A DNA stretch of 64,000 bases, from IMG/VR virus record IMGVR_UViG_3300009177_000028, positions 124,001-188,000 of that record; one strand, written 5' to 3'. Positions within the stretch are counted from its first letter, which is position 1. Each line of letters begins with the position of its first letter. A program made the translations under genes and the position numbers. Positions 29,868 through 52,803 of this stretch are shown here, one piece after another. The notes beneath the pieces were generated by a model. It made no database searches, had not been told where the DNA came from, and saw only the letters and a list, made by a program, of their open reading frames with translations.

Positions 29868-30283
29868 AGCACTTCCAAACCAGAACCTGCCCGCTATGCA
29901 GCAAGAAGCTCAAACTGGGAGACGAAGACTCCCTCCATGACTTCTACTGCGAGGACTTCTACCTTAGAGGATACGGGATGAATGAGTTTTTCCTGCTGCT
30001 AGACGATGCCACTTCCGTCAGCAGTAGGCGCCGTACCCACATAAAGGAGCCCCATTACTCTATTGATGTAACGGAAGGAAAATACCGACAGAGCACTATT
30101 ATTCCTCCGTACTGGATTATCAGTACCGAGGAAGATAACAAGTCTCGCATCTATAAATTTGGACAAGAGATTAGCCTTCCATCAGAACAAACTCTTCTGA
30201 TGGAAGTCCCCCTAATTGTCCCCAGCGACTATCTTCCTGAACAATTCGCTAAGAAGATTAAGAACCTAGTCATCTTTACATGA
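29864..30283 (+). CDS. Zn-ribbon/FS-tag family member 19
   Basis: CPLC; ends KKIKNLVIFT. Confidence 0.8.
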   Translation: MKHFQTRTCPLCSKKLKLGDEDSLHDFYCEDFYLRGYGMNEFFLLLDDATSVSSRRRTHIKEPHYSIDVTEGKYRQSTIIPPYWIISTEEDNKSRIYKFGQEISLPSEQTLLMEVPLIVPSDYLPEQFAKKIKNLVIFT

Positions 30284-30623
30284 AGTGTCTCAGAAGCTCT
30301 TGGAGCCCTGCTATATCGAATGGCTTCTTGAGGTAGGTACCTGGTTTGAATTCCTTGTCGAGATCGGCAGAGGCACTCATAACCACGATGGGGGTAGAGT
30401 TCAGTCCCGCCTTCTTGGCGGCCACTAGAAACTCTCGTCCGCTCATGATGGACATCATCAGGTCAAGCAGGACCAAGCGGGGATGGTGGTCTTGGAGCCA
30501 GTTCAGGGCGTCTTGGCCGTTGTTGCAGGAGGCCATTTCCCACCCACTGTCCTCTAGGACAAAGCCCAGCACTTCTCGGAGGTCGAGGTCGTCATCCACA
30601 ACCAGCACTTGAGGTTTATCCAC
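30276..30623 (-). CDS. Single-domain response regulator (receiver)
   Basis: VLVVDDD; VLLDLMM (phosphoacceptor Asp); VVMSA; KKPF; GTG start just after the kinase stop. Confidence 0.9.
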   Translation of the reverse strand: MDKPQVLVVDDDLDLREVLGFVLEDSGWEMASCNNGQDALNWLQDHHPRLVLLDLMMSIMSGREFLVAAKKAGLNSTPIVVMSASADLDKEFKPGTYLKKPFDIAGLQELLRHFM

Positions 30624-30628
30624 AACTT

Positions 30629-31783
30629 CTACCTTTCTTCCAAAACGCCGCTCATGGGCAGGCACAACCTGAAAACAGACCCAGGCCCATTAGGTGGGTC
30701 GTGAATCTCGATCCGCCCGCCAAGGCTCTTGGCGGCCTCTCCGGCGAGCCAAAGGCCAATCCCCATCCCGGCGTACTGGTCACCCGAGACGGCTCGCTCG
30801 AACCTCTGGAAAATGCGCTTGCGGTCTTTCTCAGGCACACCAATGCCATAGTCCCTCACATCGACCACAACCCAGCCGTCTACATGAGCTACATTGATAT
30901 CAACAGGTTTTCCACAACCATATTTCATCGCGTTGTTGACCAGATTGGTCATAATCTGCTCAACCTTACTGACATCCCAAGTGCCGCGAATGCGCACTTT
31001 TGGCAAGTCAAGGCGAATCTCAATTCCCTGCCGTTTTGCCAAATCGTCATTCCTGAGCACAGTCTCTCGGATGACCTCACACACATCCGCATCTTGGAAC
31101 GTCACTTGCGTGGGACTGGAGCGCCGTGAGACCTCTAGCAGGTCGCGTACAAGAGCGTTGAGCTTTTGTCCAGACCTCTCCACCGCTCCCAACCTCCTCA
31201 GAATCTCTGCCCTTGACAGCTCTTCCTTTGTCAATTTCTGCACCAAGTTCTGCGATGTCAAAAGAATACTAGAGATTGGCGTTTTCAACTCATGAGCTGC
31301 CACTGAGATAAAGTCCTCTCTGATACTAATTGCCTGCTTGAGCTGCTCTCGATATTGAGATAGCTCAGTTATATCAACAAAGGAGACGATTCCTTTGCCA
31401 TCCTTCCCATGAGCTGGAGGGAGAAGCGCACCCTGACAGAGAAAGGTTCGCTTGTTGCCGGTCTCGGCGCAGGTCCAGTTAATCTCATAGGCGGTAAAGG
31501 TCTCACCTCGGGCCACCCGTCTGGAGGGGTAGTCCCTTTCGGCAATTTGACTCCCATCGTTCTCGAAAAGCCCGCCCCGCCATCTTGCCTCATAGAGGCG
31601 AAAGGCTTCCGCATTCTCTTCGATACCGGCCGGCTCCACCTCTGGAACGACGTATTTGAGCGCGGTAGCGTTCGCATACAAGATCCGTGCCGTGTCCAGC
31701 TCGACTACAATAACTGCACTGGGAAGCGTATTCAGTAGCGCTTCCATCCACTTACGATGAGCCTGCTCTTCGAGTGTTATCAT
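30629..31783 (-). CDS. PAS-domain sensor histidine kinase
   Basis: PAS-like N-terminus; H-box AAHELKTPI; N-box NLVNNAMKY; G1 DYGIGV; F-box IFQRF; G2 GMGIGL; GAGGG upstream of ATG 31783. Confidence 0.93.
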   Translation of the reverse strand: MITLEEQAHRKWMEALLNTLPSAVIVVELDTARILYANATALKYVVPEVEPAGIEENAEAFRLYEARWRGGLFENDGSQIAERDYPSRRVARGETFTAYEINWTCAETGNKRTFLCQGALLPPAHGKDGKGIVSFVDITELSQYREQLKQAISIREDFISVAAHELKTPISSILLTSQNLVQKLTKEELSRAEILRRLGAVERSGQKLNALVRDLLEVSRRSSPTQVTFQDADVCEVIRETVLRNDDLAKRQGIEIRLDLPKVRIRGTWDVSKVEQIMTNLVNNAMKYGCGKPVDINVAHVDGWVVVDVRDYGIGVPEKDRKRIFQRFERAVSGDQYAGMGIGLWLAGEAAKSLGGRIEIHDPPNGPGSVFRLCLPMSGVLEER

Positions 31784-31915
31784 GCGGTACCCCTCAGAGA
31801 CTGTATGACCATGTCTCAGCAAGACGCAAGCACAATCGCCCAGCAAAAATCATGCCATGTTGCCTTTTGCCCCACCTGTGGTTAATTTTCCATCAGGAAC
31901 TGGAATCTGAATTTT

Positions 31916-36806: not shown

Positions 36807-36846
36807 GGTAGGATAAGCAGCAGAAAGCCCCTGAAACCTGGGCGGT

Positions 36847-36880: not shown

Positions 36881-36947
36881 TACCTGGGCGGGGCGAGTAG
36901 GAGGTCCACCTACCCCAAGCGGGCGCCTCTCTCGTGTGTCGAGCATG

Positions 36948-37031
36948 CCGCGCAACGGCCGATCGTGGCGCGCTAGTGGCGCGGTAGCGCAAGGATCGGC
37001 CGCTAGTGGCGCGGTACCGCGCAACGGCCGA
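36948..37031. repeat. Nested GC-rich direct repeats
   Basis: ccgcgcaacggccga at 36948 and 37017; cgctagtggcgcggta at 36971 and 37001. Confidence 0.85.
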
Positions 37032-37303
37032 AAGCGCACTAGAAGAGCGCCTAGCGCGACCCTAGCCTATGACACCAAGATCATACCCCGGATGTAGTCA
37101 AAGGTCATGAGCTGTCGTTCAATGTTGCTCGAAAAAGGCTAATGGTTTCGTAGGGTAGACCTACATTATCCGCCAAAACTTTCGGAATTCGTCATGGTAG
37201 TTTCTTTTCCTACATCGCAATTAGTTGCTGAATTCCGACCAACCAGGACACAAAGATCATTGTGGGATAAGATGCTACACCAATGATATCATATAGTTAC
37301 AGT

Positions 37304-37319
37304 TGGCACCGACCCTGCA
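37304..37319 (+). promoter_or_regulatory. Candidate sigma54 promoter upstream of the early gene run
   Basis: TGGCACC-gacc-CTGCA with canonical GG/GC spacing. Confidence 0.45.
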
Positions 37320-37419
37320 ATGACCCCTAGACGCAACGGGAACGGATGAGAGCAGGGGTCACGCGGGCGGATCGCCCGCGCAGCCTGACAGCGCACATGG
37401 TGCGCGCTGTCGCTCGATG

Positions 37420-37432
37420 TGGTCTTTGACAA
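37420..37432 (+). promoter_or_regulatory. boxA-like antitermination sequence
   Basis: tggtctttgacaa resembles rrn boxA (TGCTCTTTAACAA); preceded by GC-rich hairpins at 37362-37380 and 37388-37411. Confidence 0.35.
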
Positions 37433-37964
37433 TCTAAACGTCTCACACGGGCGCCTCATGTGCGCCTACAGCGCGCGCCTAGCGCGTGTGCCTCCTACCT
37501 ACGGTAAGGGACAGTGTGCGATAGCGGCGACCATATAGGTCCGCTCCTACCGCGTCCCACAATCACCGAGTAGCGCACACAACCGAAGCCACTGTGGGTT
37601 ACATGCGGAAGATGTGTGGGCCAGGTGACCCGTCCTACATTCACTCCACACGGGAGACGATGTAGGCTACCCTCACCTAGTGTACGAATCCCGAGGAGGG
37701 ATAAACCGTAGGTAGGGCAATGTCCTGCTAGAGCCGACAATGTAGGCCGCGGTGAGGCGGTATGAGTCCGCAGCGTACGAATCAAGAGACTAAACGACTA
37801 TGTGGGAGGGACGCCTAGAGTGTCCTTCCCCCGTAGCGTAAAGCCTACAAGGTAAGTAACTCTCTCCAAGTCTACGGTATTGGAGTAGGAGAGAACACCT
37901 TGTGAGCTTTACGCTGCGATCATCGCAGAGTGTCCCACAACAGCAGACAACAGGAGCCAACATC

Positions 37965-38537
37965 ATGAGCCAGACCACCAGCAACGACAGCGCCGTCAAG
38001 TCGACCACCATCTCCTCCGATGTGGAGGAGCGTCTCACCGCCACCTTCAAGACCCTTCACCATCTCGTCTCCACCCACATGGTGAGTGCGGGTGCGAAGC
38101 TCACCTTCATGTCGGAGTTCGAGAAGTGTGGGATGGAGGACTACAAGGAGGTCGCGCATGCGGCACGGAAGCTGCTCGGCGCCAAGCGTCAGGAAAAGTG
38201 GGAGAACCGCATCAAGGGGATCCGTGCGGGGATCCAGGGTGTGGTCGACACCTACATGAACCGCAAACGTGCGGCCAAGGCGCAGTTCGACGCACTCCCG
38301 GAGGAGTTGCGCGCAGAAGGTGTGACCTTCAACCCCAACGTCTCCATCCCGGTGAAGGAGCTTGTGGGATGCTTCCCGCAGGGTGCGACCCAGGAGCAGA
38401 TCCTCCGAGACCTGAAGGATCTCTCCTACAACGTCATCCAGAATGCGGAAAAGGCGTACCTCATCCGCGTTGCCTTCGTTGCCGACAAGGTGGCAGACGA
38501 GGCGCCCAAGTCGGAGAAGACCGCCAAGGCGGCCTGA
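37965..38537 (+). CDS. Early hypothetical protein, ends -KAA
   Basis: CAGGAG RBS before ATG 37965; GC3-rich codons. Confidence 0.75.
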   Translation: MSQTTSNDSAVKSTTISSDVEERLTATFKTLHHLVSTHMVSAGAKLTFMSEFEKCGMEDYKEVAHAARKLLGAKRQEKWENRIKGIRAGIQGVVDTYMNRKRAAKAQFDALPEELRAEGVTFNPNVSIPVKELVGCFPQGATQEQILRDLKDLSYNVIQNAEKAYLIRVAFVADKVADEAPKSEKTAKAA

Positions 38538-38560
38538 GCGCGCAGCGTTCCGCTGAGTCT

Positions 38561-38614
38561 CCTACATCCTGCTCCCAACTGCTCCCATGTGGGGTGGTTG
38601 GGGGCAGTCGTAGG
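38561..38614 (+). repeat. Conserved intergenic stem-loop copy 1
   Basis: CCTAC-ATC-CTGCTCCCAAC...GTTGGGGGCAG-TC-GTAGG. Confidence 0.8.
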
Positions 38615-38639
38615 CGAGTCAACCACCAAGGAGGTTCAT

Positions 38640-38861
38640 GTGTTCCATACTCAGCCCAAGACCTACAAGAAGGTCTCTCTCCTCCACAAGAACTACTTCG
38701 ACCTACTCTGCGGCTCCAATGGCTACAGTAGGGAAGAGTACGACATCTGCGAGAAGGAAGACAATCTGGGGTTTCCTGTCTACACCGTGGACGTGTGGTC
38801 GCAAAGGTGCGACGACATGATGCAACGTGTGTTCAGCGAAGCCAACGGCTACAAGCGCTGA
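38640..38861 (+). CDS. Early hypothetical protein
   Basis: GGAGG RBS; GTG start. Confidence 0.6.
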   Translation: MFHTQPKTYKKVSLLHKNYFDLLCGSNGYSREEYDICEKEDNLGFPVYTVDVWSQRCDDMMQRVFSEANGYKR

Positions 38862-38865
38862 TCTA

Positions 38866-38908
38866 CCTACACCATGCTCCCGAGGGTTACTTCGGGGGCA
38901 TGAGTAGG
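38866..38908 (+). repeat. Conserved intergenic stem-loop copy 2
   Basis: CCTAC-ACC-ATGCTCCCGAG...TTCGGGGGCAT-GA-GTAGG. Confidence 0.8.
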
Positions 38909-38920
38909 AGGACCAGACAC

Positions 38921-39319
38921 ATGTACAAGTACGACGGACACTCCTTCAACATGTGCGAGGAGTGGTCGCAATGCCCACAACATCGAACGGAGACCCACAT
39001 GAAGGACAAGCTCGCTCAAGCGCCCGACCAGGTGCGACAGTTCGTACACGCTCTCATCTCCAACGCCAAAGAGGTGGAAGGGTGGGAAGTGTGCGACATG
39101 GAGGATGGCAAGTGCTTCGCTGACACCATAGCCCACATCGAGCACAAGGAAGACGGAAGGTGGGTGGTGTGCGACAACTACGAACGGTTCTTCTCTCTCA
39201 TCTACACCTACACGGTGGCAGGCGAGTGGACCGTGCGCCGCATGTATGGCGAAGGTGGGGAGATGCCCTACAGCTTCGCCAAGTGTATGGCGGATGCCTC
39301 CATCATGTTCACTGGCTGA
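38921..39319 (+). CDS. Early hypothetical protein
   Basis: AGGAGG RBS before ATG 38921. Confidence 0.7.
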   Translation: MYKYDGHSFNMCEEWSQCPQHRTETHMKDKLAQAPDQVRQFVHALISNAKEVEGWEVCDMEDGKCFADTIAHIEHKEDGRWVVCDNYERFFSLIYTYTVAGEWTVRRMYGEGGEMPYSFAKCMADASIMFTG

Positions 39320-39323
39320 TCCA

Positions 39324-39365
39324 CCTACGTCATGCCCTCATGTGTGTACATGGGGGCATTGGTAG
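39324..39365 (+). repeat. Conserved intergenic stem-loop copy 3
   Basis: CTAC-GTC-ATGCCCTCATGT...ACATGGGGGCAT-TG-GTAG. Confidence 0.75.
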
Positions 39366-39406
39366 TGGGATTAGGCTCACTAACACCAAACAAGGGAGAA
39401 TGTAAG

Positions 39407-39586
39407 ATGATCAAGTTCATTGTGGTTGTTCTGGCGTGCATCGGGGCATTCTTCGGTCTGGCGATTCTGTCGGGTCATGTCCCCCAGATCTCCCACACCG
39501 CCTTCAACATCAGCACCTTTCAGGTCACGTGGTTGATGCTGGGCGTGTGTGCGACCGGGTTCGTCTCCTACAAGGTGTGCAAGTAA
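39407..39586 (+). CDS. Small two-TM membrane protein, paralog of 54455..54640
   Basis: MIKF...H.P....AF....WL.LG.C...F.SYK..K. Confidence 0.7.
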   Translation: MIKFIVVVLACIGAFFGLAILSGHVPQISHTAFNISTFQVTWLMLGVCATGFVSYKVCK

Positions 39587-41624: not shown

Positions 41625-42518
41625 ATGAACGTGTATGAGATTGTCACCGAACGGATCATTGCAGCCCTGGAAAAGGGTGTCGTACCTTGGCGCATGCCCT
41701 GGCGTACCCAAGGTGGGAGCGGTCTCCCCAAGAACCTACAGAGTGGGAAGGAGTACCGAGGTGTCAACATCTTCCTACTGGGTGCGCAGGGGTACGCCTC
41801 TCCCTGGTGGGTTACCTACAAGCAGTGTACGGCCCGAGGTGGGCAGGTGCGCAAAGGTGAGAAGGGCACCCCGGTCATCTTCTGGAAGGTAGGAGATCAT
41901 AAGACCAAGGTGGGCAAGAGTGGGAAACCGGAGAAGATGTTTATCCTCCGGTACTACACTGTCTTCAATGTCGCCCAGTGTGATGGGCTGGACTACCCCA
42001 AGGAGGCGGTGGTGGAAGCTCCCACCTTCGACCCCATCGAGCAATGCGAGAAGATCGTTCTCGCCTACAAGACCCTACCCAAGATTGAGCACGGAGGTGG
42101 GCGAGCCTGCTACTCCCCCTCCTTCGACAAGGTGATGATGCCGGAAAAGGAGAGCTTTGGTAAGAGGGAGGAATACTACTCCACACTCTTCCACGAGCTT
42201 ACCCACAGCACCGGACATGAGAGCAGGTTGAACCGGGATGGGATCATGAATCCCATTCGGTTTGCCTCACATGACTACAGCTTTGAGGAGCTGGTAGCAG
42301 AATGTGGGGCGGCCTTTCTCTGCGCACATGCGGGTATCTTGGATACCACGCTGGACAACTCGGCCGCCTACATCTCCCACTGGGTGAGCAAGCTGAAGAG
42401 TGAGCCAAGGTGGATTGTGGAAGCCTCAAGTAAGGCAGCTAAGGCGGCTGACTACATCATGGGAGACCTGGTCAAAAAGGAGTCAGAGTCGGAGGAGTCA
42501 AGCGAGGAAGCCGCTTGA
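41625..42518 (+). CDS. ardC: ArdC-like antirestriction protein (ssDNA-binding domain plus zincin-like domain)
   Basis: YEIVTERIIAALEKGVVPWRMPW; Y.G.N; W.TYKQ....GGQVRKGEKG; YTVFNVAQ; YYSTLFHELTHSTGH; EELVAE..AAFL. Confidence 0.9.
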   Translation: MNVYEIVTERIIAALEKGVVPWRMPWRTQGGSGLPKNLQSGKEYRGVNIFLLGAQGYASPWWVTYKQCTARGGQVRKGEKGTPVIFWKVGDHKTKVGKSGKPEKMFILRYYTVFNVAQCDGLDYPKEAVVEAPTFDPIEQCEKIVLAYKTLPKIEHGGGRACYSPSFDKVMMPEKESFGKREEYYSTLFHELTHSTGHESRLNRDGIMNPIRFASHDYSFEELVAECGAAFLCAHAGILDTTLDNSAAYISHWVSKLKSEPRWIVEASSKAAKAADYIMGDLVKKESESEESSEEAA

Positions 42519-45399: not shown

Positions 45400-45717
45400 A
45401 TGAAGACACTGGTGCTGGTGGAGGATGATCTGATGCTTGCTAGCACCTTCATTCGGGTGTTGGGCAAAACTCACAACATCCTCCACTTCCTGACAGTCAA
45501 GGATGCCAGAGCACATCTGGCCTTGAATCCCACACCTGATGTCCTCCTCCTGGATCGTCAGGTGGGGTATGACAATGGGTGGGCGTTGCGGGAGGAGGTG
45601 GGTACGGGTGTCAGGGTGGTCCTGATGACGGGCGCTCCTCCCCAAGGCAATTCACTTACCTTCTTCCACAAGGGAGTAGATAACATACAAAAACTTATCA
45701 GTATGGTAGAAGGCTAA
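45400..45717 (+). CDS. Orphan receiver domain 1
   Basis: LVLVEDD; VLLLD; LMTG; HKG. Confidence 0.8.
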   Translation: MKTLVLVEDDLMLASTFIRVLGKTHNILHFLTVKDARAHLALNPTPDVLLLDRQVGYDNGWALREEVGTGVRVVLMTGAPPQGNSLTFFHKGVDNIQKLISMVEG

Positions 45718-45721
45718 ACTT

Positions 45722-45764
45722 CCTACACCCTGCCTATTAGAATTATCTAGTGGGCAGAAGTAGG
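45722..45764 (+). repeat. Conserved intergenic stem-loop copy 8
   Basis: CCTAC-ACC-CTGCCTATTAG...CTAGTGGGCAG-AA-GTAGG. Confidence 0.8.
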
Positions 45765-45808
45765 GGGATTCATCCTGAATCTTCTGAGACAAGGAAAGAG
45801 GAGAGCGC

Positions 45809-46363
45809 ATGAATAAGTTGGTGTATGCGGTAGTGGTTGCCTTGGCAGCGGTGGTGGGATGTGCAGCTCCGGTGGGAGACAAGTCGGAGCAGGTGGGACA
45901 GGTCAGTCAGGCGCTGGTTACCTTCGACCCTGCGACAGGGACGGGGTTTGTGGGGAAAGGTGATATCCAGCTTCCCTTCGGGTGGAACAATGCCACCTTG
46001 CAGGCCAATGCAAGTTCGCTCACCTTCACCTACCAGAGCAGCGCCACCTACGAGGCGGTGTGCGAGTGGACCACCGGTGAAGGGACTCGTGGTCAACGGA
46101 CCCACGATGTCACACACACCAAGACCAGTGTGGTCAACGACACCATCTCCTACGATGCTCGCACCCACAAGCAGGTGGACGGATTCTTCCTGACAGGGTA
46201 CGGCAGTGTGACCGAAGGTGGGGAACCTGTTCCCGAGGTAGGAGGACCCTGCCCTGGCAACCCTGGAACGGATGGGGTGTGGGTCAGTGTGGTCCTGCTC
46301 AACTCCACGGGTGGGGGCTTGTGGGTGACCAACGCAGCGGGTGGGACGGCTCAGCTTCTGTAG
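45809..46363 (+). CDS. Lipoprotein
   Basis: MNKLVYAVVVALAAVVGC lipobox, then EQVGQVSQAL linker. Confidence 0.75.
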   Translation: MNKLVYAVVVALAAVVGCAAPVGDKSEQVGQVSQALVTFDPATGTGFVGKGDIQLPFGWNNATLQANASSLTFTYQSSATYEAVCEWTTGEGTRGQRTHDVTHTKTSVVNDTISYDARTHKQVDGFFLTGYGSVTEGGEPVPEVGGPCPGNPGTDGVWVSVVLLNSTGGGLWVTNAAGGTAQLL

Positions 46364-46372
46364 AGATACTTT

Positions 46373-46444
46373 CTACATCCTGCCGATTATTCGTCTGGCT
46401 GATAAACTCGGTTTATTCGTCTGGCAGATAGTCGGCAGTAGTAG
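46373..46444 (+). repeat. Conserved intergenic stem-loop copy 9 (extended apex)
   Basis: CTAC-ATC-CTGCCGATTAT...ATAGTCGGCAG-TA-GTAG; apex holds ttattcgtctggc twice. Confidence 0.75.
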
Positions 46445-46691
46445 GAGGTGTGTCATGTAATCGGCTAACTAACTTGTTTACCCGATAGTGTGGGAAACCC
46501 TGAGAGTGTGTCGCGACATTCAAGACATGGTGTATTGAATGGGCGCATGTGAGAATCCACGATACCCCAAGAGCTTTTGACGACAATGTAGTTCTAAGTC
46601 TTCTATTACTCGCCTATAACCGAAACCTGCCGAAAGGGTGGGGAGTAGGTTATGGGCGCACATAGAGGGATTAGAAAGGAAAGGCAAGACC

Positions 46692-47156
46692 ATGCACGAC
46701 ATCAACGGCAAACCACTTCACATCGGCTCGGACATCTACTCTTCCCTACATGGACTCTGCAAGATCGTCGGTGTGCGAGAGGAGCACAATCCCGACCAGG
46801 GAGGAGCTTGCATCGAGGTAAACTCCTACACTCGGGGTGGAGGTATCATCCTTCGCACTCACGAGCACAAGGTGACCAAGGTGCGTACTTGGAAGGAGAT
46901 GGCGGATGAATCCCTACGGGTGCAGGATGCCTGCAACCTGTCGGGAGTGGTCCACGCTTTCTCTACCATCATCACCGAGGTGCGCACACGGTTGGACAGT
47001 GAGGGCCAGGGTGGGACGGACAACGTCAACAACCATCCTGTCTGTCGTCTCTTCTCCGACAAGATTGCTTCCCTGACGGGTACGCAATTCTGCAACGATG
47101 ACGCACACCAAAACTTCTCCGATGCCTACAAGTGGGCACACGAGCAGAGCAAGTGA
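46692..47156 (+). CDS. Early hypothetical protein
   Basis: GAAAGG RBS. Confidence 0.7.
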   Translation: MHDINGKPLHIGSDIYSSLHGLCKIVGVREEHNPDQGGACIEVNSYTRGGGIILRTHEHKVTKVRTWKEMADESLRVQDACNLSGVVHAFSTIITEVRTRLDSEGQGGTDNVNNHPVCRLFSDKIASLTGTQFCNDDAHQNFSDAYKWAHEQSK

Positions 47157-47368
47157 GCAAGAAGCCTACTTACTCCCTGGTGAAGGGAGATGTCTTCATC
47201 GGGTCTGACTTGCAAGCCTGGACGGTGGACGAAGTGGTCAAACCGGAGGGCTGGAACACACTTCCGCAGATTGGGGAAAAGCCCAAGGTGTGGGAGGTGA
47301 GAGCACATCGGGGCCAAGCCAATCGGCGCTTCTACTACCACGGCACACGTTTGGTGGAAGTCAAGTAG
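47153..47368 (+). CDS. Small hypothetical protein
   Basis: GTGA overlap. Confidence 0.55.
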   Translation: MSKKPTYSLVKGDVFIGSDLQAWTVDEVVKPEGWNTLPQIGEKPKVWEVRAHRGQANRRFYYHGTRLVEVK

Positions 47369-47514
47369 TTACGCGCACTTAGGTGAGACATTATCGGTAT
47401 GGCGATAAGAATATCGCTATAGCGATAAAAAGTCTGTAACCACTTGGAACTACAGGGGAATGCGCGAACTAGGGCGCGAGAGTCGGAGGTGTAGGGCGGG
47501 CTGGGCCTGGGGTG

Positions 47515-47536
47515 GTTGGCATGTTTGCATGTAGCA
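47515..47536 (+). promoter_or_regulatory. 22-bp motif copy
   Basis: GTTGGCATGTTTGCATGTAGCA. Confidence 0.7.
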
Positions 47537-47762
47537 AAAAGGGTGCCACCTGCCGCTGGAGCTTCTGGGAGGCGCACCCGCACCTACCTTCTGCTTCAAT
47601 TCTTTTGCAATTGAGCGTTTCTTAGTGGCGCATGTGAAAGCGCGCTCCCATAATGAATGGCCAGCGCAAACAAACGAATGAGAGGGGTGGGACAATGAAG
47701 CTGGGAATCTGACAACGGCAATTCAACCTGCAACCTCAACCTACAGAGAAGGATAATCAACC

Positions 47763-48092
47763 ATGGCAATGCGAGCAATCAACGAAGTTCACGACAGCGC
47801 AATCATCCGACAGTTGGTCACGATGGACGAGATGGACCTCTTCATGTCCACCTTCGACCAGACTGTCACGGTAGGTGAGCATCCACTAACCTTCTCGGGA
47901 TGGGCAATCAAGAATGAAGTGCAGGTGATGCAGTGTGCGTCCGAGTGCGACATCGCCTTGGGGCTGCTGGCGCTGTCTCCCATCTTTCAGCACAAGGACT
48001 ACGCGGATGACGCCTTGTACGAGGTGGGATGTCTGATGCACGGTAGCGAAGAAGAATACATCAACTTCTTGATGTTGATCAGCAATCGCTGA
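47763..48092 (+). CDS. Early hypothetical protein
   Basis: AAGGA RBS. Confidence 0.65.
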   Translation: MAMRAINEVHDSAIIRQLVTMDEMDLFMSTFDQTVTVGEHPLTFSGWAIKNEVQVMQCASECDIALGLLALSPIFQHKDYADDALYEVGCLMHGSEEEYINFLMLISNR

Positions 48093-48096
48093 TTGT

Positions 48097-48141
48097 CCTA
48101 CACCCTGCCCATAACTGGAAACGGTTGTGGGCATGAGTAGG
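48097..48141 (+). repeat. Conserved intergenic stem-loop copy 10
   Basis: CCTAC-ACC-CTGCCCATAACT...GGTTGTGGGCAT-GA-GTAGG. Confidence 0.8.
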
Positions 48142-48169
48142 CGAATCAACGCCAACAACGGAGGATGTC

Positions 48170-48763
48170 ATGTTGAATCAAAAGAACCAAACATGCCACA
48201 TGAAGCACTTCTGTGAGCGTGAGTCGTTCAATCGGAAGCGCCGGTTGTACACCGATGGGAGCTACCGTGAGTCAAGGTACGAGGTGTGGGATCCTTACTA
48301 CCGGGGTGGTCCTGACGAGGTACCCGATGAGGTGCTGGTGTACGAGGCCGAATCCAAAGAGGAGTGTGAGGCTTACATGGCCACGCAGGGTAAGGCATTG
48401 GAGCTTCGGGAGAACGGTGTGTGTCAGGTGTGCGACCTGTACGAGAAGCGTCAGGCGCACCTTCGGGATGGACGTGTGGATCCCTTCTACCTGGTGGTTT
48501 CAGGTACGAGTCGCCACTACGGTGGACCCGAAGAGGGTGGATGGTGGTACAACTGGACGGAGATTCTGGAGGTGCGCCGAGCGTTCACCTTTCAGGAGGG
48601 ACTCCGACAAGCTCGTGAGTTGAGAGATAAGTACCCACAACCTAAGTACGACATCTACTCGTGCGCCAACGATGGTGAGCCCAATACGGAGATTACCCTC
48701 TGTTACGGGGAAGCGGATCCACGTTGGCCACATGAGAGTACAGAAAGGCCAAGGTACGAGTGA
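48170..48763 (+). CDS. Early hypothetical protein (YGGPEEGGWWY motif)
   Basis: GGAGG RBS. Confidence 0.75.
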   Translation: MLNQKNQTCHMKHFCERESFNRKRRLYTDGSYRESRYEVWDPYYRGGPDEVPDEVLVYEAESKEECEAYMATQGKALELRENGVCQVCDLYEKRQAHLRDGRVDPFYLVVSGTSRHYGGPEEGGWWYNWTEILEVRRAFTFQEGLRQARELRDKYPQPKYDIYSCANDGEPNTEITLCYGEADPRWPHESTERPRYE

Positions 48764-48987
48764 TGGAAGTCCAGGTGGAGAAAGAGCACATGGTGGCGGA
48801 GCTGGTGGGTAACTTCGATGATGTCACCTGCGTGGTGGTACATTGTCAGGACTACGACCACTTTCGCCGACTTCCGCAGGTGGTCTCCTACCAGGGAATC
48901 CTGTGTGGGAAAACGGGGTGGAACTCGGATACCAACCGAGCCCACTATCAAAGCAACGCATCGCTGGTCAAAGTGGAGAGGAGGTAG
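48760..48987 (+). CDS. Small hypothetical protein
   Basis: GTGA overlap. Confidence 0.55.
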   Translation: MMEVQVEKEHMVAELVGNFDDVTCVVVHCQDYDHFRRLPQVVSYQGILCGKTGWNSDTNRAHYQSNASLVKVERR

Positions 48988-48991
48988 GACA

Positions 48992-49192
48992 ATGGCGGTC
49001 AAGGTATCGGACTTGAAGGATCAGATAGGTGTGGGTGGCCCTCACCCTATCCTCTACTGTCGGTGTTGTGGGGGAGAGTATTCGGCCAACAAAGGCGATT
49101 ACTTTCTCCTACCTCCTGACGAAGTGATGACTTGTTGTGAGCAAGAGTTGGTGCTTGTCACCAAACGTGTGGTGTATCAAGAGACAAGCTGA
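48992..49192 (+). CDS. Small Zn-finger-like protein
   Basis: CRCC...TCC; GGAGG RBS. Confidence 0.6.
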   Translation: MAVKVSDLKDQIGVGGPHPILYCRCCGGEYSANKGDYFLLPPDEVMTCCEQELVLVTKRVVYQETS

Positions 49193-49608
49193 TGGGAGTT
49201 GCTGCACACACCATCCTCATTGTTGAGGATAACAACGACATTCGGCTTCTTTTCACCGCAGTGTTCACCTTATGTGGGATGAATGTTCTTGCCACCCGCA
49301 CACTTAGGGATGCATGTCGGGCATTCGAGGCAGGTGTTCAGATTGACGCCATTATGGTAGATTACACATTACCGGATGGTGTAGGTCCCAACATCTTGAC
49401 CCTTCTGGGCGACAAGTTGCCTAAGGTGCGAGTGTTGGTAACTGGACACGATATCACACATCCTGGTTTCAGTGAATGCTTCACCAAACCAGTAGACATG
49501 GGCCTACTTTGTAGGTCGGTTCGTTCAGGATTGGAGAAGGTATACCATGCAACTAGCGAAGCAAGTGGAACATGCGGGCAAGTCGGTCAAGGTGTTCTAC
49601 GACCCTGA
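49192..49608 (+). CDS. Orphan receiver domain 2
   Basis: ILIVEDN; IMVDYTLPDGVG; LVTG; TKPV. Confidence 0.88.
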   Translation: MGVAAHTILIVEDNNDIRLLFTAVFTLCGMNVLATRTLRDACRAFEAGVQIDAIMVDYTLPDGVGPNILTLLGDKLPKVRVLVTGHDITHPGFSECFTKPVDMGLLCRSVRSGLEKVYHATSEASGTCGQVGQGVLRP

Positions 49609-50164
49609 TCCGCTCAACCCGCGCAAGGAGTGGGACAACGGCACCATCATGCTTCATTGGCATCCGAGGTACGACCTTGGAGACAAGAAGGTGGAGCGGT
49701 GCACGGCGGATGAGGTGCGAGAGGAGTACCAGGACAGGGGTGACCCGGTCCTCTGTATTCTCCCTCTTTACCTGTACGACCATTCGGGTCTGAGTGTCAG
49801 CACGGGTGGCTTCTCCTGTCGGTTCGACTCGGGCCAGGTGGGATGGGTCATCATCACTCAGTCCAAGAAGGAGGAGATGGGATTCCCCGATAACTACACT
49901 ACGGAGATGTACGAGGAAGTCATCAAACAGGATGTCAAGACCTACGATGACTACCTGACCGGACAGGTGTTCGGATACGAGGTGGAGGGGCGAGATGGTG
50001 ACACCCTGGACTCCTGTTGGGGTTTCGTGGGTGACATGGAGGATTGCCTCTCCGAAGGTAAGAGTGCAGCCGAAGGGTGCGAGGATCCTGCGGTTGCTCG
50101 GGAGGTGGAGGAGCTACAGGCACGGGCCACCTACGCTGGTGTGGGTGGAAAGGAGGAGTCATGA
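49547..50164 (+). CDS. Conserved phage/ICE-type hypothetical protein
   Basis: LPLYLYDHSGLSVST...DSGQVGW...YDDYLTG.V.GY...DSCWGF.G. Confidence 0.75.
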   Translation: MQLAKQVEHAGKSVKVFYDPDPLNPRKEWDNGTIMLHWHPRYDLGDKKVERCTADEVREEYQDRGDPVLCILPLYLYDHSGLSVSTGGFSCRFDSGQVGWVIITQSKKEEMGFPDNYTTEMYEEVIKQDVKTYDDYLTGQVFGYEVEGRDGDTLDSCWGFVGDMEDCLSEGKSAAEGCEDPAVAREVEELQARATYAGVGGKEES

Positions 50165-50415
50165 GAGAGTTTCGTTGCACACGTATCACCCCATTCGGCC
50201 ACCCCTACAACACCAACGCCCCGGCCTACATGGACACCTCGGCTCGCCAAGGCCACTACGTCCACGCACGGGATGAGGTGGAGGCTTACAACAAGATGGC
50301 AAAGGAGTTTCCGGAAGACATTGAAGGCAAACCTCTGACGGAAACCTTCACGGTCGAATTCGTCAAGGATGTTACGGCCTGGTATGCTCCAAAGGAAAAG
50401 AAGGTGGGACCATGA
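50161..50415 (+). CDS. Small hypothetical protein
   Basis: AGGAGG RBS; ATGA overlap. Confidence 0.6.
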   Translation: MREFRCTRITPFGHPYNTNAPAYMDTSARQGHYVHARDEVEAYNKMAKEFPEDIEGKPLTETFTVEFVKDVTAWYAPKEKKVGP

Positions 50416-50699
50416 ACGACAACAAGCGTTTTCGTAATTCCGAATCGCGCAACCTGATGGCGTTCGTGCTCGCACTCGACCCCACCATGCGAGATACTCT
50501 CCGACAGTTGCTTCGCATGGGGGCGTACAACATCCGGCACGACCACATGTACGTGCTCAACAAGGAGACTGGGAAGTATGACTACCTCCCGGATCCTACT
50601 GCGTGGAATGCCGACCTGGACGCCTTTGGTGGGAAGAACAACATGGGTGTCACCATGTTGCGCACACGTCAGGGCGAGTGGTTTCTCAACGGCTGCTGA
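50412..50699 (+). CDS. Small hypothetical protein
   Basis: ATGA overlap. Confidence 0.6.
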   Translation: MNDNKRFRNSESRNLMAFVLALDPTMRDTLRQLLRMGAYNIRHDHMYVLNKETGKYDYLPDPTAWNADLDAFGGKNNMGVTMLRTRQGEWFLNGC

Positions 50700-50710
50700 A
50701 AGGAGCACAC

Positions 50711-50893
50711 ATGCTGGTCATTCAGGTTCTTTGGTCGGATGGTTTCATTCATAACGAGTGGAACACCGACAAGGAAGATGAAAAGGCAATTCAGGAGGCG
50801 CGCGATCACCTTCAGGATCCTACCTTCGAGGGTGACTACATGCGCATCATCACGAGCGATGGTGAGCTGGTGTGGGATAGTCGGAACCAGTAA
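50711..50893 (+). CDS. Small hypothetical protein
   Basis: AAGGAG RBS. Confidence 0.6.
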   Translation: MLVIQVLWSDGFIHNEWNTDKEDEKAIQEARDHLQDPTFEGDYMRIITSDGELVWDSRNQ

Positions 50894-51050
50894 ACGTTAC
50901 TCTCTGCGGAGAAGAAAGGCACGGTGGGACAACGTATACATATCAGATATAATCCAAAACGCACAGCCAAAACTAAAACTTCGTAGTATATTGGGAGACA
51001 ATGTCAGATAGGATAATATCCTGTCGTAGTGTGTAAAAGGGGTAAGACTA

Positions 51051-51449
51051 ATGTATACTGTTATGATCGTGGAAGATGACGATGATCAAATAGTCCTACT
51101 GTCGGGTCTCATATCCTCCTTTGGATACCGTGTTCTGACCGCTCGTTCCAAAAAAGAAGCTATGTCTATCATTGACTCACATGTCAAGATAGATGTTCTC
51201 TTTACCGACTTCATGCTCGGAGATGGGACGGGAGGTGAGATTCTGGCCGAGATGCGGGAACGTCTCCCACGTATCATGACCATCCTTTACACTGGTGTAA
51301 CCAAGTTTCCTCCCAGTCTCAGTGGTGGGTTTGATGACTACCTAACCAAACCTGTCAATACAAGTGACCTTCGCTGCACCATTGCATCCTGCTTAGAGGT
51401 GCGCACGCAGCGACAGAGTGATGTGAAGAAGAGTGAACGAGCAGCCTGA
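51051..51449 (+). CDS. Orphan receiver domain 3, ends -RAA
   Basis: VMIVEDD; LFTDFMLGDGTG; LYTG; LTKPV. Confidence 0.9.
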   Translation: MYTVMIVEDDDDQIVLLSGLISSFGYRVLTARSKKEAMSIIDSHVKIDVLFTDFMLGDGTGGEILAEMRERLPRIMTILYTGVTKFPPSLSGGFDDYLTKPVNTSDLRCTIASCLEVRTQRQSDVKKSERAA

Positions 51450-51465
51450 AAGGAAGGATACGACC

Positions 51466-51648
51466 ATGAATTCAGTTACCATCAAACCGAGCAACAAGCG
51501 TTCCTTTCGTCTTACCATGCTGAATCCGCGCACCAAGGATCGTTTCACCTGCACGGTGGAAGGATTCACCAAGGTGGATGCGGAGAGGCGAGCACGTAAG
51601 CAGGCTCCCAACTTTTCGGTATGTGTGGAAGTTCAGGAGGCAGCTTGA
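51466..51648 (+). CDS. Small hypothetical protein, ends -EAA
   Basis: AAGGA RBS. Confidence 0.6.
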   Translation: MNSVTIKPSNKRSFRLTMLNPRTKDRFTCTVEGFTKVDAERRARKQAPNFSVCVEVQEAA

Positions 51649-51965
51649 ACAAGAAACTAATTGTGTTGATTGGTAGGCGCTGGTTCCAAAAGGGACCGGG
51701 TAATACCTACCACGACACGGAGATCATTGCTCAGGGTTTCAAAGGCGGAATCCTCCACCATCGAACCACCATGGATTACGGGTATGGAGATACCTACATC
51801 CAAACAGGTGCTCGCTGGTTGGAGGATCAAGGTGTGCTCAAGTTGGAGCGTTACTCCAATGGAGCAGTGGAGCCGCTCTGGCGCTACTGTCAGGACCACG
51901 GCATCAAACTGATTACTTCAGTGGTGGATGTGGGTTCCAGAAAGGAATTGAAGGAAGATGCCTAG
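51645..51965 (+). CDS. Hypothetical protein
   Basis: TTGA overlap; AGGAGG RBS. Confidence 0.6.
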   Translation: MNKKLIVLIGRRWFQKGPGNTYHDTEIIAQGFKGGILHHRTTMDYGYGDTYIQTGARWLEDQGVLKLERYSNGAVEPLWRYCQDHGIKLITSVVDVGSRKELKEDA

Positions 51966-52130
51966 CTTCATATATCGGCCCGGACCTTACAGAGGTCCCT
52001 GGCCAGTGGAACCGTGCGCCTTCTGCGATGAGCCAACCACCTGTAAGAGCAGGTGTGGGAAGTTCTTTCATTGCAGTGTCTGTCAGTTCAACAAGGTCGA
52101 CAAGCGAACAAGGAAAGTGAAGGTAGCAGC

Positions 52131-52352
52131 ATGACTCCCAAGCGCGCACAAGAGATTATCCAGGCTGCTTACGACCGCTGCACCTGTGGTCCCTGGTGTG
52201 ACCAGTTGGACAAGGTGATGACGGATCAGGAAAGGAAGGAAGTCAACCAGGTGTGGGATACCATGCCAGGTGATACCAACTTCGTGGATGCCATCTACCG
52301 CATTGCTCGTACAGACGCGCCCAACTGGGCCATCAAGACAGGACGTGAATGA
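52131..52352 (+). CDS. Small hypothetical protein
   Basis: GAAGG upstream of ATG 52131. Confidence 0.55.
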   Translation: MTPKRAQEIIQAAYDRCTCGPWCDQLDKVMTDQERKEVNQVWDTMPGDTNFVDAIYRIARTDAPNWAIKTGRE

Positions 52353-52419
52353 AAGTACACACAATCAAGGGAAACATCACACACTGGGAAGAAGATCCTT
52401 ATCGGGAAAGGAGGCATAA

Positions 52420-52803
52420 TTGACTACTCCAAACACAAACATCACTAAAGGTACGCTCATGGTGGTTGATGATGATGCAGATAACCTGGAGCTAATGGAG
52501 TTTTCCTTGCTCCATCAGGGTTACGAAGTCATCAAAGCAGCTTCCATGTGCGAGGCCGTGGAAACGTTCCGCAGCAGTCCGTACCCTATCCGTGCTCTGA
52601 TTACCGACTATTGGTTGGGAGACGGGACTGGAGCAGAGCTGGTCACACACCTAGGGGAGAGTGCTCCTAGTGTGAGGATTCTGGTCAGCGGAAGTTCAGA
52701 GATTCGTACCAATAGGACGTTTGATGCTTTTCTGGTCAAACCTGTCCTACCTAATAGGCTTCAGGAGATTCTAGCGGATCTCCTTCATGAGAGGGCGGTG
52801 TAG
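52420..52803 (+). CDS. Orphan receiver domain 4
   Basis: LMVVDDD; LITDYWLGDGTG; LVSG; LVKPV. Confidence 0.9.
   Translation: MTTPNTNITKGTLMVVDDDADNLELMEFSLLHQGYEVIKAASMCEAVETFRSSPYPIRALITDYWLGDGTGAELVTHLGESAPSVRILVSGSSEIRTNRTFDAFLVKPVLPNRLQEILADLLHERAV

What the first reader, a model, noticed from the sequence alone, without database searches (positions are those of the whole stretch)
45400..52803. Four stand-alone receiver domains scattered in the early region
Seen: receivers at 45400, 49192, 51051 and 52420, none next to a kinase or output domain. All retain the acidic pocket, phosphoacceptor Asp, Thr/Ser switch and Lys. Three share D(Y/F)xL(P/G)DGxG, suggesting paralogy. Sample lines are lower in GC (26/60 at 51121, 29/60 at 49201) than a neighbour (35/60 at 49621). 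Established: myxobacteria run development and motility on very large two-component networks, and single-domain receivers can act as phosphate sinks or as protease adaptors (CpdR for ClpXP). Inference: phage phosphate sinks or adaptors that block sporulation, motility or stress signalling.
Basis: partly seen in the sequence, partly recalled or inferred. Interest (0 to 1): 0.72.

Follow-up and report, generated by a model that had tools for sequence, protein, structure and literature searches.

The report
Jumbo phage carries five receiver proteins

Summary
The four ORFs are real, intact receiver (REC) domains. Three pass Pfam's threshold. The fourth, at 45400, fails it, but its conserved homologues and a confident structure model show a receiver fold that lacks helix alpha4.

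All four keep the acidic pocket, the phospho-Asp, the Thr/Ser and the Lys. Orthologues in related phage contigs keep them too, and dN/dS is about 0.2.

"No kinase nearby" is true only locally. The same 204-kb phage record encodes one soluble PAS-HisKA-HATPase histidine kinase, at window 30629-31783 (-). A fifth receiver (30276-30665, -) overlaps the kinase's 3' end. Relatives keep this operon at about 50% identity. The record holds no Hpt, no sigma54 activator domain and no second kinase (HisKA), and none of the five receivers carries an output domain.

A phylogeny puts the receivers at 49192, 51051 and 52420 in one phage-specific paralogue clade. The 45400 family and the kinase-linked receiver have separate origins. 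Receiver content differs between related phages.

The 40%-to-55% GC switch at about 36.5 kb is a true join, not a chimera. A myxobacterial host is only weakly suggested.

The function is inferred: phospho-accepting Rec-only modules acting as sinks or hubs on host or phage kinases. Membership of the CpdR, FATGUY or cRec families was tested and not met.

The parts
45400..45717 (+). REC1: 105-aa stand-alone receiver lacking helix alpha4. Active-site residues are E8/D9, D52, T77 and K91. The ATG follows directly after the stop of the upstream gene.
   Evidence: dN/dS is 0.22 against the 81%-identical orthologue in L182.
49192..49608 (+). REC2: 138-aa stand-alone receiver (D13, D57, T84, K99). Its last ~24 residues are a tail found only in this phage, and the ORF's last 62 nt overlap the next gene.
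   Evidence: Pfam 34.9 bits. Orthologue in L190 at 44% identity keeps the site. Absent at the syntenic place in L006 and L182. Public gene callers did not call it.
51051..51449 (+). REC3: 132-aa stand-alone receiver (D9, D53, T81, K100). Alpha4 is very short and weakly predicted. Alpha5 is extended to 28 residues.
   Evidence: Pfam 56.8 bits. Orthologues at 60% identity in L006 and L007. AlphaFold2 pLDDT 88.6. Foldseek matches receivers at TMq 0.8-0.88. dN/dS 0.18 with dS saturated.
52420..52803 (+). REC4: 127-aa stand-alone receiver. The TTG start sits 6 nt after an AAGGAGG ribosome-binding site. The 114-aa public gene call starting at ATG 52459 would truncate strand beta1.
   Evidence: Pfam 38.4 bits. 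Orthologues in L007 (52%), L143 (46%) and L190 (55%). Upstream sequence.
30276..30665 (-). It overlaps the 3' end of the kinase gene by 37 nt, which suggests translational coupling.
   Evidence: PF00072 at 63-64 bits. Orthologues downstream of the kinase in L008, L009 and L010 at 47-49% identity. The overlap with the kinase gene is kept in L009/L010 but not in L008.
30629..31783 (-). Soluble sensor histidine kinase of 384 aa from the ATG (the ORF extends to TTG 31846). It has an N-terminal PAS-like region, a HisKA domain with the H-box AAHELKTP, and an HATPase_c domain with N, G1 and G2 boxes.
   Evidence: HATPase_c 78.6 bits, HisKA 43.9 bits, PAS_8 18.6 bits (weak). It is the only HisKA in the record. 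Five homologues at 50-54% identity conserve all catalytic boxes.
31842..31857 (-). Sigma54-type -24/-12 motif, TGGCATG-ATTT-TTGCT, 74 nt upstream of the kinase's ATG.
   Evidence: Pattern match only. Looser GG-N10-GC motifs lie upstream of the kinase in L009/L010 at other distances.
45722..45765 (+). Hairpin (CCTACACCCTGCC - loop - GGGCAG.AGTAGG) directly after the REC1 stop codon. It is one of about 8-10 copies of an intergenic element between 38.5 and 48.1 kb.
50911..50968 (+). Non-coding block upstream of REC3, conserved in L006 and L007. It holds a sigma70-like GGGACA-16-TATAAT.
   Evidence: The promoter scan as a whole was not enriched over shuffles.

Best explanation
The four ORFs are genuine Rec-only response regulators that look able to be phosphorylated. 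They belong to an uncultivated soil jumbo myovirus. They form part of a virus-borne two-component gene set made of one soluble PAS-histidine kinase and five single-domain receivers. The 204 kb available hold no Hpt, and none of the five receivers carries an output domain.

Shown:
- Domain identity and an intact active site.
- Purifying selection.
- A phage-specific paralogue family (REC2/3/4), plus a separate REC1 family without alpha4.
- Presence of the kinase-REC5 operon.
- Conservation, with copy-number turnover, in related phages.

Inferred mechanism:
- After injection, the co-directional block of small genes expresses the receivers.
- They accept phosphoryl groups on the conserved Asp from histidine kinases. 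These would be host kinases through mass-action cross-talk, and possibly the phage kinase.
- They have no output domain, and helix alpha4, part of the usual output face, is degenerate or absent. So they would act as phosphate sinks or hubs, or as phospho-dependent binding partners.
- The result would be host signalling rewired during infection, rather than direct transcriptional control.
For: Domain and active site.

Phage identity of the record: tail sheath, baseplate wedge, tail fibre and ribonucleotide reductase; IMG/VR virus record estimated 48% complete.

Real join of the two GC compartments: contigs from independent groundwater and soil runs cross it.

Inventory of the 204 kb: one HisKA, five REC, no Hpt, no sigma54 AAA+ domain.

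Selection: dN/dS 0.18-0.22, similar to neighbouring genes.

Origins: the REC2/3/4 clade and the separate REC1 and REC5 clades. In the profile search, four phage-type single-domain proteins score 121-137 bits, against 74 bits or less for any cellular domain.

Turnover among relatives:
- L182/L006/L007 have REC1, REC3 and REC4 but not REC2.
- L190 has REC2 and REC4 but not REC3.
- L191 has a tandem REC3-like pair.

Such turnover is typical of host-interaction genes.

Output face: alpha4 is missing in REC1 and degenerate in REC3, and the switch Thr/Ser is followed by Gly in REC1-4. Missing helices have been reported mainly in Rec-only intermediaries such as SdrG and Sma0114, and the Rec domain of CckA also has a degenerate beta4-beta5 linker (PMC9981736).
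Against: No phosphorylation, expression or partner data exist.

The one complex prediction (kinase DHp-CA dimer plus REC3) returned 'no answer' and counts neither way.

The donor kinase is unknown. The alpha1 specificity positions of REC1-4 differ from those of REC5 when the alignment is read by eye; this was not computed.

The host is unidentified, so the host pathways involved are pure inference.

Only about half of the genome is in hand. An Hpt, an output protein or further kinases could lie in the missing half.
Confidence: 0.45

Rival explanations
1. Phage-internal branched pathway. The phage's own PAS-kinase is the dedicated phosphodonor for all five receivers (one kinase, many receivers). 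This would make a virus-encoded circuit that reads host physiological state and sets the infection programme. It is not exclusive with the best explanation.
For: - There is exactly one kinase and five Rec-only proteins, with no other two-component parts, in the 204 kb.
- The GC3 of the kinase and REC5 (0.59-0.64) matches the high-GC compartment that holds the orphans (0.61), not the 40%-GC region around them.
- In relative L008 the kinase-REC operon sits among homologues of window genes from 55.8-70.8 kb.
Against: - The orphans lie 15-22 kb away, on the other strand and in a different gene block.
- They form separate clades from REC5.
- Their alpha1 residues differ from REC5's (read by eye).
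- Co-occurrence of kinase and orphans in relatives could not be checked, because only fragments were available.
- The complex prediction gave no answer.
Confidence: 0.25
2. Dominant-negative partners. The truncated receivers heterodimerise with host response regulators, for example NtrC-type or OmpR-type ones, through the alpha4-beta5-alpha5 face or the extended alpha5, and so poison their activation.
For: - REC3 has a 28-residue alpha5 extension resembling the coiled-coil linkers of NtrC1, HupR and DgcR, which are among its best structural matches at TMq 0.83-0.88.
- The pattern scan's nearest cellular hits are receivers of ~440-aa proteins that lie next to kinases.
- Sigma54-like motifs are about 3-fold enriched in the genome.
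Against: - Alpha4 is degenerate or absent, which weakens a canonical 4-5-5 dimer.
- No host is known, so no partner can be named.
- Strict conservation of the phospho-Asp, Thr and Lys argues that phosphorylation matters.
Confidence: 0.1
3. Protease adaptors or anti-adaptors of the CpdR or RssB type. These would redirect ClpXP-type proteolysis according to their phosphorylation state.
For: They are single-domain receivers without an output domain, like CpdR. There are weak NCBIfam matches to CpdR (REC4) and RssB (REC2, REC5).
Against: Scores are far below the family cut-offs: CpdR 20 against 180 bits, RssB 20-50 against 329 bits. Any receiver gives matches of that kind. There is no protease gene context.
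Confidence: 0.07
4. cRec-type enzymes. These are the divergent receiver-fold phosphoesterases described in jumbo phages, which process cyclic ADP-ribose or 2',3'-cyclic phosphate ends.
For: Jumbo phages are known to carry divergent Rec domains that are not part of two-component systems (PMC7824862). REC1 is divergent enough to fail Pfam's threshold.
Against: - The cRec context is absent. Seventeen neighbouring ORFs gave no Macro, NADAR, Nudix, ART, WYL or RNA-ligase match.
- REC2-4 pass the canonical Pfam threshold.
- A canonical kinase is present in the genome.
- Most REC1 homologues hit PF00072.
Confidence: 0.03
5. Artefact. On this view the high-GC 44-kb part carrying the receivers is host or foreign DNA wrongly joined to a 40%-GC phage contig.
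For: There is an abrupt GC switch from 40% to 55% at window ~36.5 kb. Depth is 2.0-2.4 times higher to the right of the switch.
Against: - Unbroken contigs from independent groundwater and soil runs cross the switch: 36037-39500 and 36477-39500.
- About 19 runs hold the stretch.
- Relative L008 mixes homologues from both compartments.
- The right-hand part has phage-like small-gene architecture, with PHROG families and an ArdC-like gene.
Confidence: 0.02

Closest known systems
Canonical CheY-like receiver domains (Pfam PF00072) occurring as single-domain response regulators
   Same: - The fold is the same.
- The acidic pair, phospho-Asp, Thr/Ser, the aromatic residue three positions before the Lys (a Cys there in REC2), and the Lys-Pro are all present (Lys-Gly in REC1).
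- The size is 105-138 aa with no output domain.
   Different: - They are encoded by a virus.
- Identity to any cellular receiver found is 37% or less.
- The beta4-beta5 linker (alpha4) is shortened or missing.
- They form phage-specific clades.
Rec-only phosphotransfer intermediaries and hubs of the FATGUY group (SdrG, Sma0114, MrrA; also the Rec domain of CckA, and CpdR), as discussed in PMC9981736
   Same: - They are stand-alone receivers.
- Alpha4 is missing or degenerate.
- The Thr/Ser is followed by Gly in REC1-4.
- The plausible role is as a passive phospho-acceptor rather than an allosteric switch.
   Different: - The defining PFxFATG[G/Y] motif is absent. Only the 'TG/SG' pair is shared.
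- No Hpt or HWE/HisKA2 kinase partner was found.
- The similarity is in how they might work, not in family membership.
Phosphate-sink response regulators in branched pathways (the Sinorhizobium CheY1 type; recalled from the literature, not tested here)
   Same: There are several receivers per kinase and no output domain, so a draining role is plausible.
   Different: There is no CheA (no Hpt domain) and no chemotaxis context. Sink kinetics are untested.
cRec domains of jumbo phages (Iyer et al. 2021, PMC7824862)
   Same: They are receiver-fold proteins encoded by jumbo phages.
   Different: cRec is never found with histidine kinases and is linked to NAD+/ADP-ribose or RNA-ligase genes. Here a kinase is present and no such neighbours exist.
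Phage proteins that target host two-component systems, such as PIT4 of Pseudomonas phage LSL4 (PMC10714779; title and abstract only)
   Same: It is an early phage gene product that perturbs host two-component signalling.
   Different: From the title and abstract, nothing indicates that PIT4 is a receiver domain. The present genes would act by mimicking the pathway's own component.

Membership tests
Receiver domain (PF00072, CheY-like) | Profile match above Pfam's gathering score (30.2 bits) | tested here: met
   REC2 34.9, REC3 56.8, REC4 38.4 and REC5 64.1 bits. REC1 alone scores 14.3 bits and is not met by sequence, but most of its homologues carry PF00072.
Receiver domain (PF00072, CheY-like) | (beta-alpha)5 Rossmann-like fold | tested here: met
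   REC1 model has pLDDT 94, lacks alpha4, and matches receivers at TMq 0.77-0.85. REC3 model has pLDDT 88.6, a 4-residue alpha4, and TMq 0.8-0.88. REC2 and REC4 were not modelled.
Receiver domain (PF00072, CheY-like) | Active-site quintet: two acidic residues after beta1, Asp at the end of beta3, Thr/Ser at the end of beta4, Lys at the end of beta5 | tested here: met
   Present in all five receivers and conserved in all orthologues aligned.
Receiver domain (PF00072, CheY-like) | Phosphorylation on the conserved Asp | not testable with these tools
   Needs biochemistry: acetyl phosphate or kinase donors with Phos-tag gels.
Classical two-component pair (cognate kinase plus regulator) | Receiver gene adjacent to, or co-operonic with, a histidine kinase | tested here: not met
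   REC1-4 have no kinase within their block; seventeen neighbouring ORFs gave no kinase domain. The feature is met only by REC5, which overlaps the kinase gene by 37 nt.
Classical two-component pair (cognate kinase plus regulator) | Kinase with H-box His and N/G1/G2 ATP-binding boxes | tested here: met
   HisKA 43.9 bits and HATPase_c 78.6 bits. The boxes are invariant in six homologues.
Classical two-component pair (cognate kinase plus regulator) | Specific kinase-to-receiver docking and phosphotransfer | tested here: inconclusive
   The complex prediction of the kinase DHp-CA dimer with REC3 gave 'no answer' (score 0.01).
CpdR-type ClpXP adaptor | Equivalog-level sequence match (NCBIfam NF046022, cut-off 180 bits) | tested here: not met
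   REC4 scores 20.1 bits. The others give no hit.
FATGUY Rec-only proteins (SdrG/Sma0114/MrrA) | PFxFATG[G/Y] motif at beta4 and the following loop | tested here: not met
   Window copies read VLMTGA, VLVTGH, ILYTGV and ILVSGS. Only the T/S-G pair is shared.
FATGUY Rec-only proteins (SdrG/Sma0114/MrrA) | Missing or degenerate alpha4 | tested here: met
   Absent in the REC1 model. In REC3 it is a short helix with pLDDT of about 67.
Phosphorelay intermediate (Spo0F-like) | Hpt or Spo0B-type phosphotransferase partner in the genome | tested here: not met
   No PF01627 (Hpt) match in the 204 kb. Spo0B-type proteins were not searched, and half the genome is missing.
cRec (jumbo-phage cyclic-phosphate-processing Rec) | Gene-neighbourhood link to NAD+/ADP-ribose-processing or RNA-ligase genes, and never found with a histidine kinase | tested here: not met
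   No such Pfam domains in seventeen neighbouring ORFs. A kinase is present in the genome.
Chemotaxis CheY | CheA (Hpt-containing kinase) and other che genes in the same genome | tested here: not met
   No Hpt domain, and only one kinase, of HisKA type.

The most novel reading that the evidence does not exclude
The phage runs its own signalling network of one kinase and five receivers. The cytoplasmic PAS-kinase senses a metabolic or redox state of the infected cell. It distributes phosphoryl groups to a diversifying set of Rec-only proteins. These proteins in turn gate phage decisions (timing, lysis, dormancy) or shut down particular host pathways. That would be a virus-encoded decision circuit built from two-component parts and conserved across a clade of soil jumbo phages.
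Probability: 0.2. Interest if true: 0.8.

Novelty: new variant of a known kind. Interest (0 to 1): 0.55.

Why it matters
Two-component signalling is regarded as cellular equipment. Phages are known to interfere with it, but they are rarely seen carrying a whole set of its parts.

Full-text searches here found no paper describing a phage-encoded kinase with multiple Rec-only regulators. No related isolate was found in GenBank phage records.

The genes described here offer three things:
- a clade of soil jumbo phages that conserves a kinase-receiver operon;
- a family of minimal receivers that is still expanding and turning over;
- very small receivers (105 aa, no alpha4) that could serve as simple models for what a receiver needs in order to work.

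If these receivers drain or redirect host phosphorylation, that would be viral takeover by mimicry of a signalling component.

Tried and rejected
1. **Chimeric assembly as the cause of the GC switch: rejected.** Independent contigs cross the join, and relative L008 mixes genes from both compartments.
2. **Close relatives among isolated phages: none.** Megablast found nothing. The tblastn hits are at 25-37% identity and many lie in unannotated fragment records that may be host DNA. The clearest genuine phage with an annotated kinase/receiver gene is Microcoleus phage My-WqHQDG; a freshwater Bacteriophage sp. record annotated EvgS is another.
3. **Host inference from the kinase: not decisive.** Named hits lean towards Myxococcota at 33-40% identity. 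None of those loci shares other genes with the phage.
5. **Complex prediction of kinase with REC3: no answer,** and not used as evidence.
6. **Profile search of 1.8 billion representatives.** The ranking was swamped by multi-receiver proteins. It became useful only after re-scoring per domain.
7. **Named-family checks.** CpdR, RssB, DivK and other NCBIfam equivalogs were all far below their cut-offs. PADLOC gave only a weak match of REC1 to the N-terminus of an SduA model.
8. **cRec reading: rejected on gene context**.
10. **Promoter and terminator scan of 44-54 kb: not enriched over shuffles**.
11. **The sigma54-like motif upstream of the kinase is not conserved in position** in L008, L009 or L010.

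Full report
**What the window is**

The window is bases 124001-188000 of a 204,387-bp IMG/VR virus record (Ga0105248_10000031). CheckV rates the record 48% complete.

Large ORFs outside the window match PHROG families for tail sheath, baseplate wedge, tail fibre, a virion structural protein and ribonucleotide reductase. The record is therefore a fragment of a myovirus-like jumbo phage.

The first 160 kb of the record is about 40% GC. The last 44 kb, from window ~36.5 kb onwards, is 50-57% GC. The four flagged ORFs lie in this high-GC part. It is a one-strand block of small genes that also holds an ArdC-like gene.

**Is the join real?**

A 4-kb stretch across the GC switch is held by about 19 soil, rhizosphere and groundwater DNA runs. 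Logan contigs from a groundwater run (36037-39500) and from a soil run (36477-39500) cross it without a break.

A 269-kb contig from another assembly (L008) places homologues of the low-GC-side kinase operon among homologues of high-GC-side genes.

I conclude that the contig is not a chimera. Depth is 2.0-2.4 times higher to the right of the switch. That is unexplained.

**Checking the observation**

All four ORFs are present. Pfam's Response_reg model, with a gathering score of 30.2 bits, gives:

| ORF | Name used here | Score (bits) |
|---|---|---|
| 45400-45717 | REC1 | 14.3 |
| 49192-49608 | REC2 | 34.9 |
| 51051-51449 | REC3 | 56.8 |
| 52420-52803 | REC4 | 38.4 |

REC1 fails the threshold, but three lines of evidence rescue it:
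- It has seven homologues of 93-117 aa at 42-81% identity, most with a precomputed PF00072 hit.
- The Asp, Thr and Lys are invariant across them.
- An AlphaFold2 model has pLDDT 94 and a receiver topology that simply lacks helix alpha4. Its best PDB matches are receivers at TMq 0.77-0.85.

REC3 models at pLDDT 88.6. Its alpha4 is only four residues long and weakly predicted. Its alpha5 extends to 28 residues. The best structural matches are ordinary receivers, including NtrC1, HupR and DgcR.

The acidic pocket, phospho-Asp, Thr/Ser and Lys are present in all four, and in every orthologue aligned.

For REC4, a strong ribosome-binding site 6 nt before TTG 52420 supports the 127-aa reading. The 114-aa public gene call would cut strand beta1.

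GC3 is 0.46 for REC2 and 0.49 for REC3, against 0.61 +/- 0.10 for 54 neighbouring ORFs. REC1 and REC4 are unremarkable.

A genome-wide Response_reg search finds a fifth receiver at window 30276-30665 on the minus strand, scoring 63 bits. It overlaps by 37 nt the end of an ORF with the following matches:
- HATPase_c, 78.6 bits
- HisKA, 43.9 bits
- a weak PAS match

This is a soluble sensor histidine kinase and the only HisKA in the record. The 204 kb hold no Hpt and no sigma54-activator AAA+ domain.

The kinase has five homologues at 50-54% identity that conserve the H, N, G1 and G2 boxes. Where context is available, each of these is followed by a receiver:
- In L009 and L010 the pair sits, as here, inside an array of small CxxC paralogues.
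- In L008 it sits among homologues of the window's high-GC genes.

The GC3 of the kinase and REC5 (0.59-0.64) matches the high-GC compartment, not the 40%-GC region around them.

**Evolution of the receivers**

For REC3, the word-indexed search of 5.8 billion proteins returned only the protein itself, two relatives at 60% identity, and cellular receivers at 34% or less.

A profile of REC2/3/4 was searched against 1.8 billion representatives and re-scored per domain. Four further single-domain proteins score 121-137 bits, and no cellular domain exceeds 74 bits.

In a maximum-likelihood tree of 64 receiver sequences:
- REC2, REC3, REC4 and their relatives form one clade, with support 96/77, or 98/92 when one unplaced 139-aa protein is included.
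- The REC1 family forms a separate, long-branched clade (100/100).
- REC5 and its orthologues form a third clade (100/100) that groups with two OmpR-type cellular receivers, with weak support.

The motif alone would not have shown it, because DxxLPDGxG also occurs in ordinary OmpR-family receivers (my own knowledge).

dN/dS is 0.22 for REC1 (dS 0.54) and 0.18 for REC3 (dS saturated). These values are similar to those of neighbouring genes.

**Turnover between related phages**

| Related contig(s) | Receivers present | Receivers absent |
|---|---|---|
| L182, L006, L007 | REC1, REC3, REC4 | REC2 at its syntenic site |
| L190 | REC2 (44% identity), REC4 | REC3 |
| L191 (116-kb contig) | two adjacent REC3-like genes | REC1 and REC4 |
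| L143 | REC4 only (4.6-kb fragment) | not informative |

The receivers thus behave as a conserved but variable accessory family inside an otherwise syntenic block.

**What they most likely do**

Shown: these are intact, selected, virus-specific Rec-only proteins, in a genome that also carries one kinase-receiver operon and in which no receiver carries an output domain.

Inferred: they accept phosphoryl groups and act through protein contacts or by draining phosphate.

Four features favour a passive acceptor, sink or hub role over a classical allosteric output:
- They have no effector domain.
- The beta4-beta5 segment is shortened in all five. There are 10-15 residues between the switch Thr/Ser and the aromatic residue, against 18 in CheY. 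I counted these on the alignments; the CheY figure is from memory.
- Alpha4 is absent in REC1 and degenerate in REC3.
- Gly follows the Thr/Ser in REC1-4.

Loss of helices has been reported mainly in Rec-only intermediaries such as SdrG and Sma0114, and the Rec domain of CckA shows a similarly degenerate linker (PMC9981736). The defining PFxFATG[G/Y] motif of that group is absent, however. This is a resemblance in how they might work, not membership.

Whether the donor is a host kinase or the phage kinase cannot be decided here:
- The orphans lie on the other strand, 15-22 kb from the kinase, in a different gene block and in different clades.
- The only complex prediction gave no answer.

I rank 'sink or hub acting mainly on host kinases' first and 'branches of the phage's own kinase' second. 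The two are not exclusive.

**Rejected or weak alternatives**

- **cRec.** These jumbo-phage receiver-fold enzymes are linked to NAD+/ADP-ribose or RNA-ligase genes and are never found with kinases (PMC7824862). Seventeen neighbouring ORFs show no such domains, and a kinase is present.
- **CpdR, RssB, DivK and other named equivalogs.** All score far below their cut-offs.
- **Dominant-negative pairing with host regulators.** This is suggested only by REC3's long alpha5.

**Host**

The kinase's named cellular relatives are mostly Myxococcota (Hyalangium, Archangium, Stigmatella, Polyangium, Cystobacter), but at 33-40% identity. A scan of species genomes gave mixed phyla.

A myxobacterial host is possible but not shown.

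**Novelty and verdict**

No related isolate exists in GenBank phage records. Full-text searches found no description of a phage with a kinase plus several Rec-only regulators.

The domain itself is ordinary. The new element is the set: one kinase and five minimal receivers, conserved with turnover across a clade of soil jumbo phages. I file it as a new variant of a known kind.

Interest is moderate, because the function is untested and the host is unknown.

Noticed in passing
window 28359-34165 (+): An array of about a dozen tandem paralogous ORFs of 112-139 aa. Each has an N-terminal CxxC and a second Cys pair, and each ends in a hydrophobic '...L(L/I)(V/I/L)FS' tail. The kinase-REC5 operon is inserted in the array on the opposite strand. 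L009 and L010 show the same arrangement. Pfam gives only a weak zinc-ribbon match.
   Followed up: partly
window 34162-36239 (-): Three consecutive peptidase genes just left of the GC switch; the first two begin with signal-peptide or lipoprotein-like N-termini. They are a zincin with an HEMGHxxGxxH motif (weak M10/M12 match), a Trypsin_2 peptidase (90 bits) and a Peptidase_C39-like protein (49 bits).
   Followed up: partly
window ~36300-36900; genome 160.3-160.9 kb: An abrupt change of composition from ~40% to ~55% GC inside one phage genome. It is confirmed as a real join. K-mer depth to the right is 2.0-2.4 times that to the left in two independent runs (18.2 against 7.6, and 8.3 against 3.3-5.1). 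The cause could be a long terminal repeat, or a segment shared by several strains.
   Followed up: partly
window 36611-36884, and 39946, 40575, 41430, 43308, 47500: A palindromic element of about 35-46 nt, with GTTGG(C/T)ATG at one end and CATGCCAAC at the other. Three tandem copies lie at the compartment boundary, and inverted copies lie further in. Each holds a sigma54-like TGGYATG-N4-NTGCA. Several inner copies directly follow a hairpin (CCTACACCCTGCC - loop - GGGCAGGAGTAG) that recurs 8-10 times between 38.5 and 48.1 kb. These are probably transcription-unit boundaries with operator or promoter sites.
   Followed up: partly
whole genome; example at window 31842-31857 (-): Sigma54-type GG-N10-GC motifs (two mismatches or fewer to TGGCAC-N5-TTGCW) are about 3-fold enriched over mononucleotide shuffles in both compartments: 48 against 14.6, and 22 against 7.3. 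A near-consensus copy lies 74 nt upstream of the kinase's ATG. The 204 kb encode no sigma54-activator AAA+ domain.
   Followed up: partly
window 49192-49608; L002 8002-8357; L190 1651-2019: Public gene callers left REC2 and its L190 orthologue uncalled, as gaps in their gene lists. The ORF is nonetheless intact and conserved at 44% amino-acid identity. Its low GC3 (0.46) and its 62-nt overlap with the next gene may explain the miss.
   Followed up: yes
window 41625-42518 (+): An ArdC-like protein (ArdcN 127 bits plus the zincin MPTase-PolyVal 128 bits). It is conserved at 64-66% identity in relatives L182 and L191, upstream of the receivers. This fits an anti-restriction or host-takeover gene block.
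   Followed up: partly
window 45400-45717: REC1 gives a weak PADLOC match (20.5 bits, E 7e-5) to the N-terminal 70 residues of an SduA (Shedu, DUF4263) model. That model probably includes a receiver-like N-domain.
   Followed up: no
L181 (Logan contig, 66% GC): A REC1-family gene (42% identity) lies in an otherwise unrelated, very GC-rich phage-like contig of small genes. The short receivers without alpha4 therefore occur beyond this phage clade.
   Followed up: partly
L008 8711-9484: The 269-kb relative carries a second, shorter HisKA-HATPase kinase (257 aa) just upstream of the conserved kinase-receiver operon.
   Followed up: no
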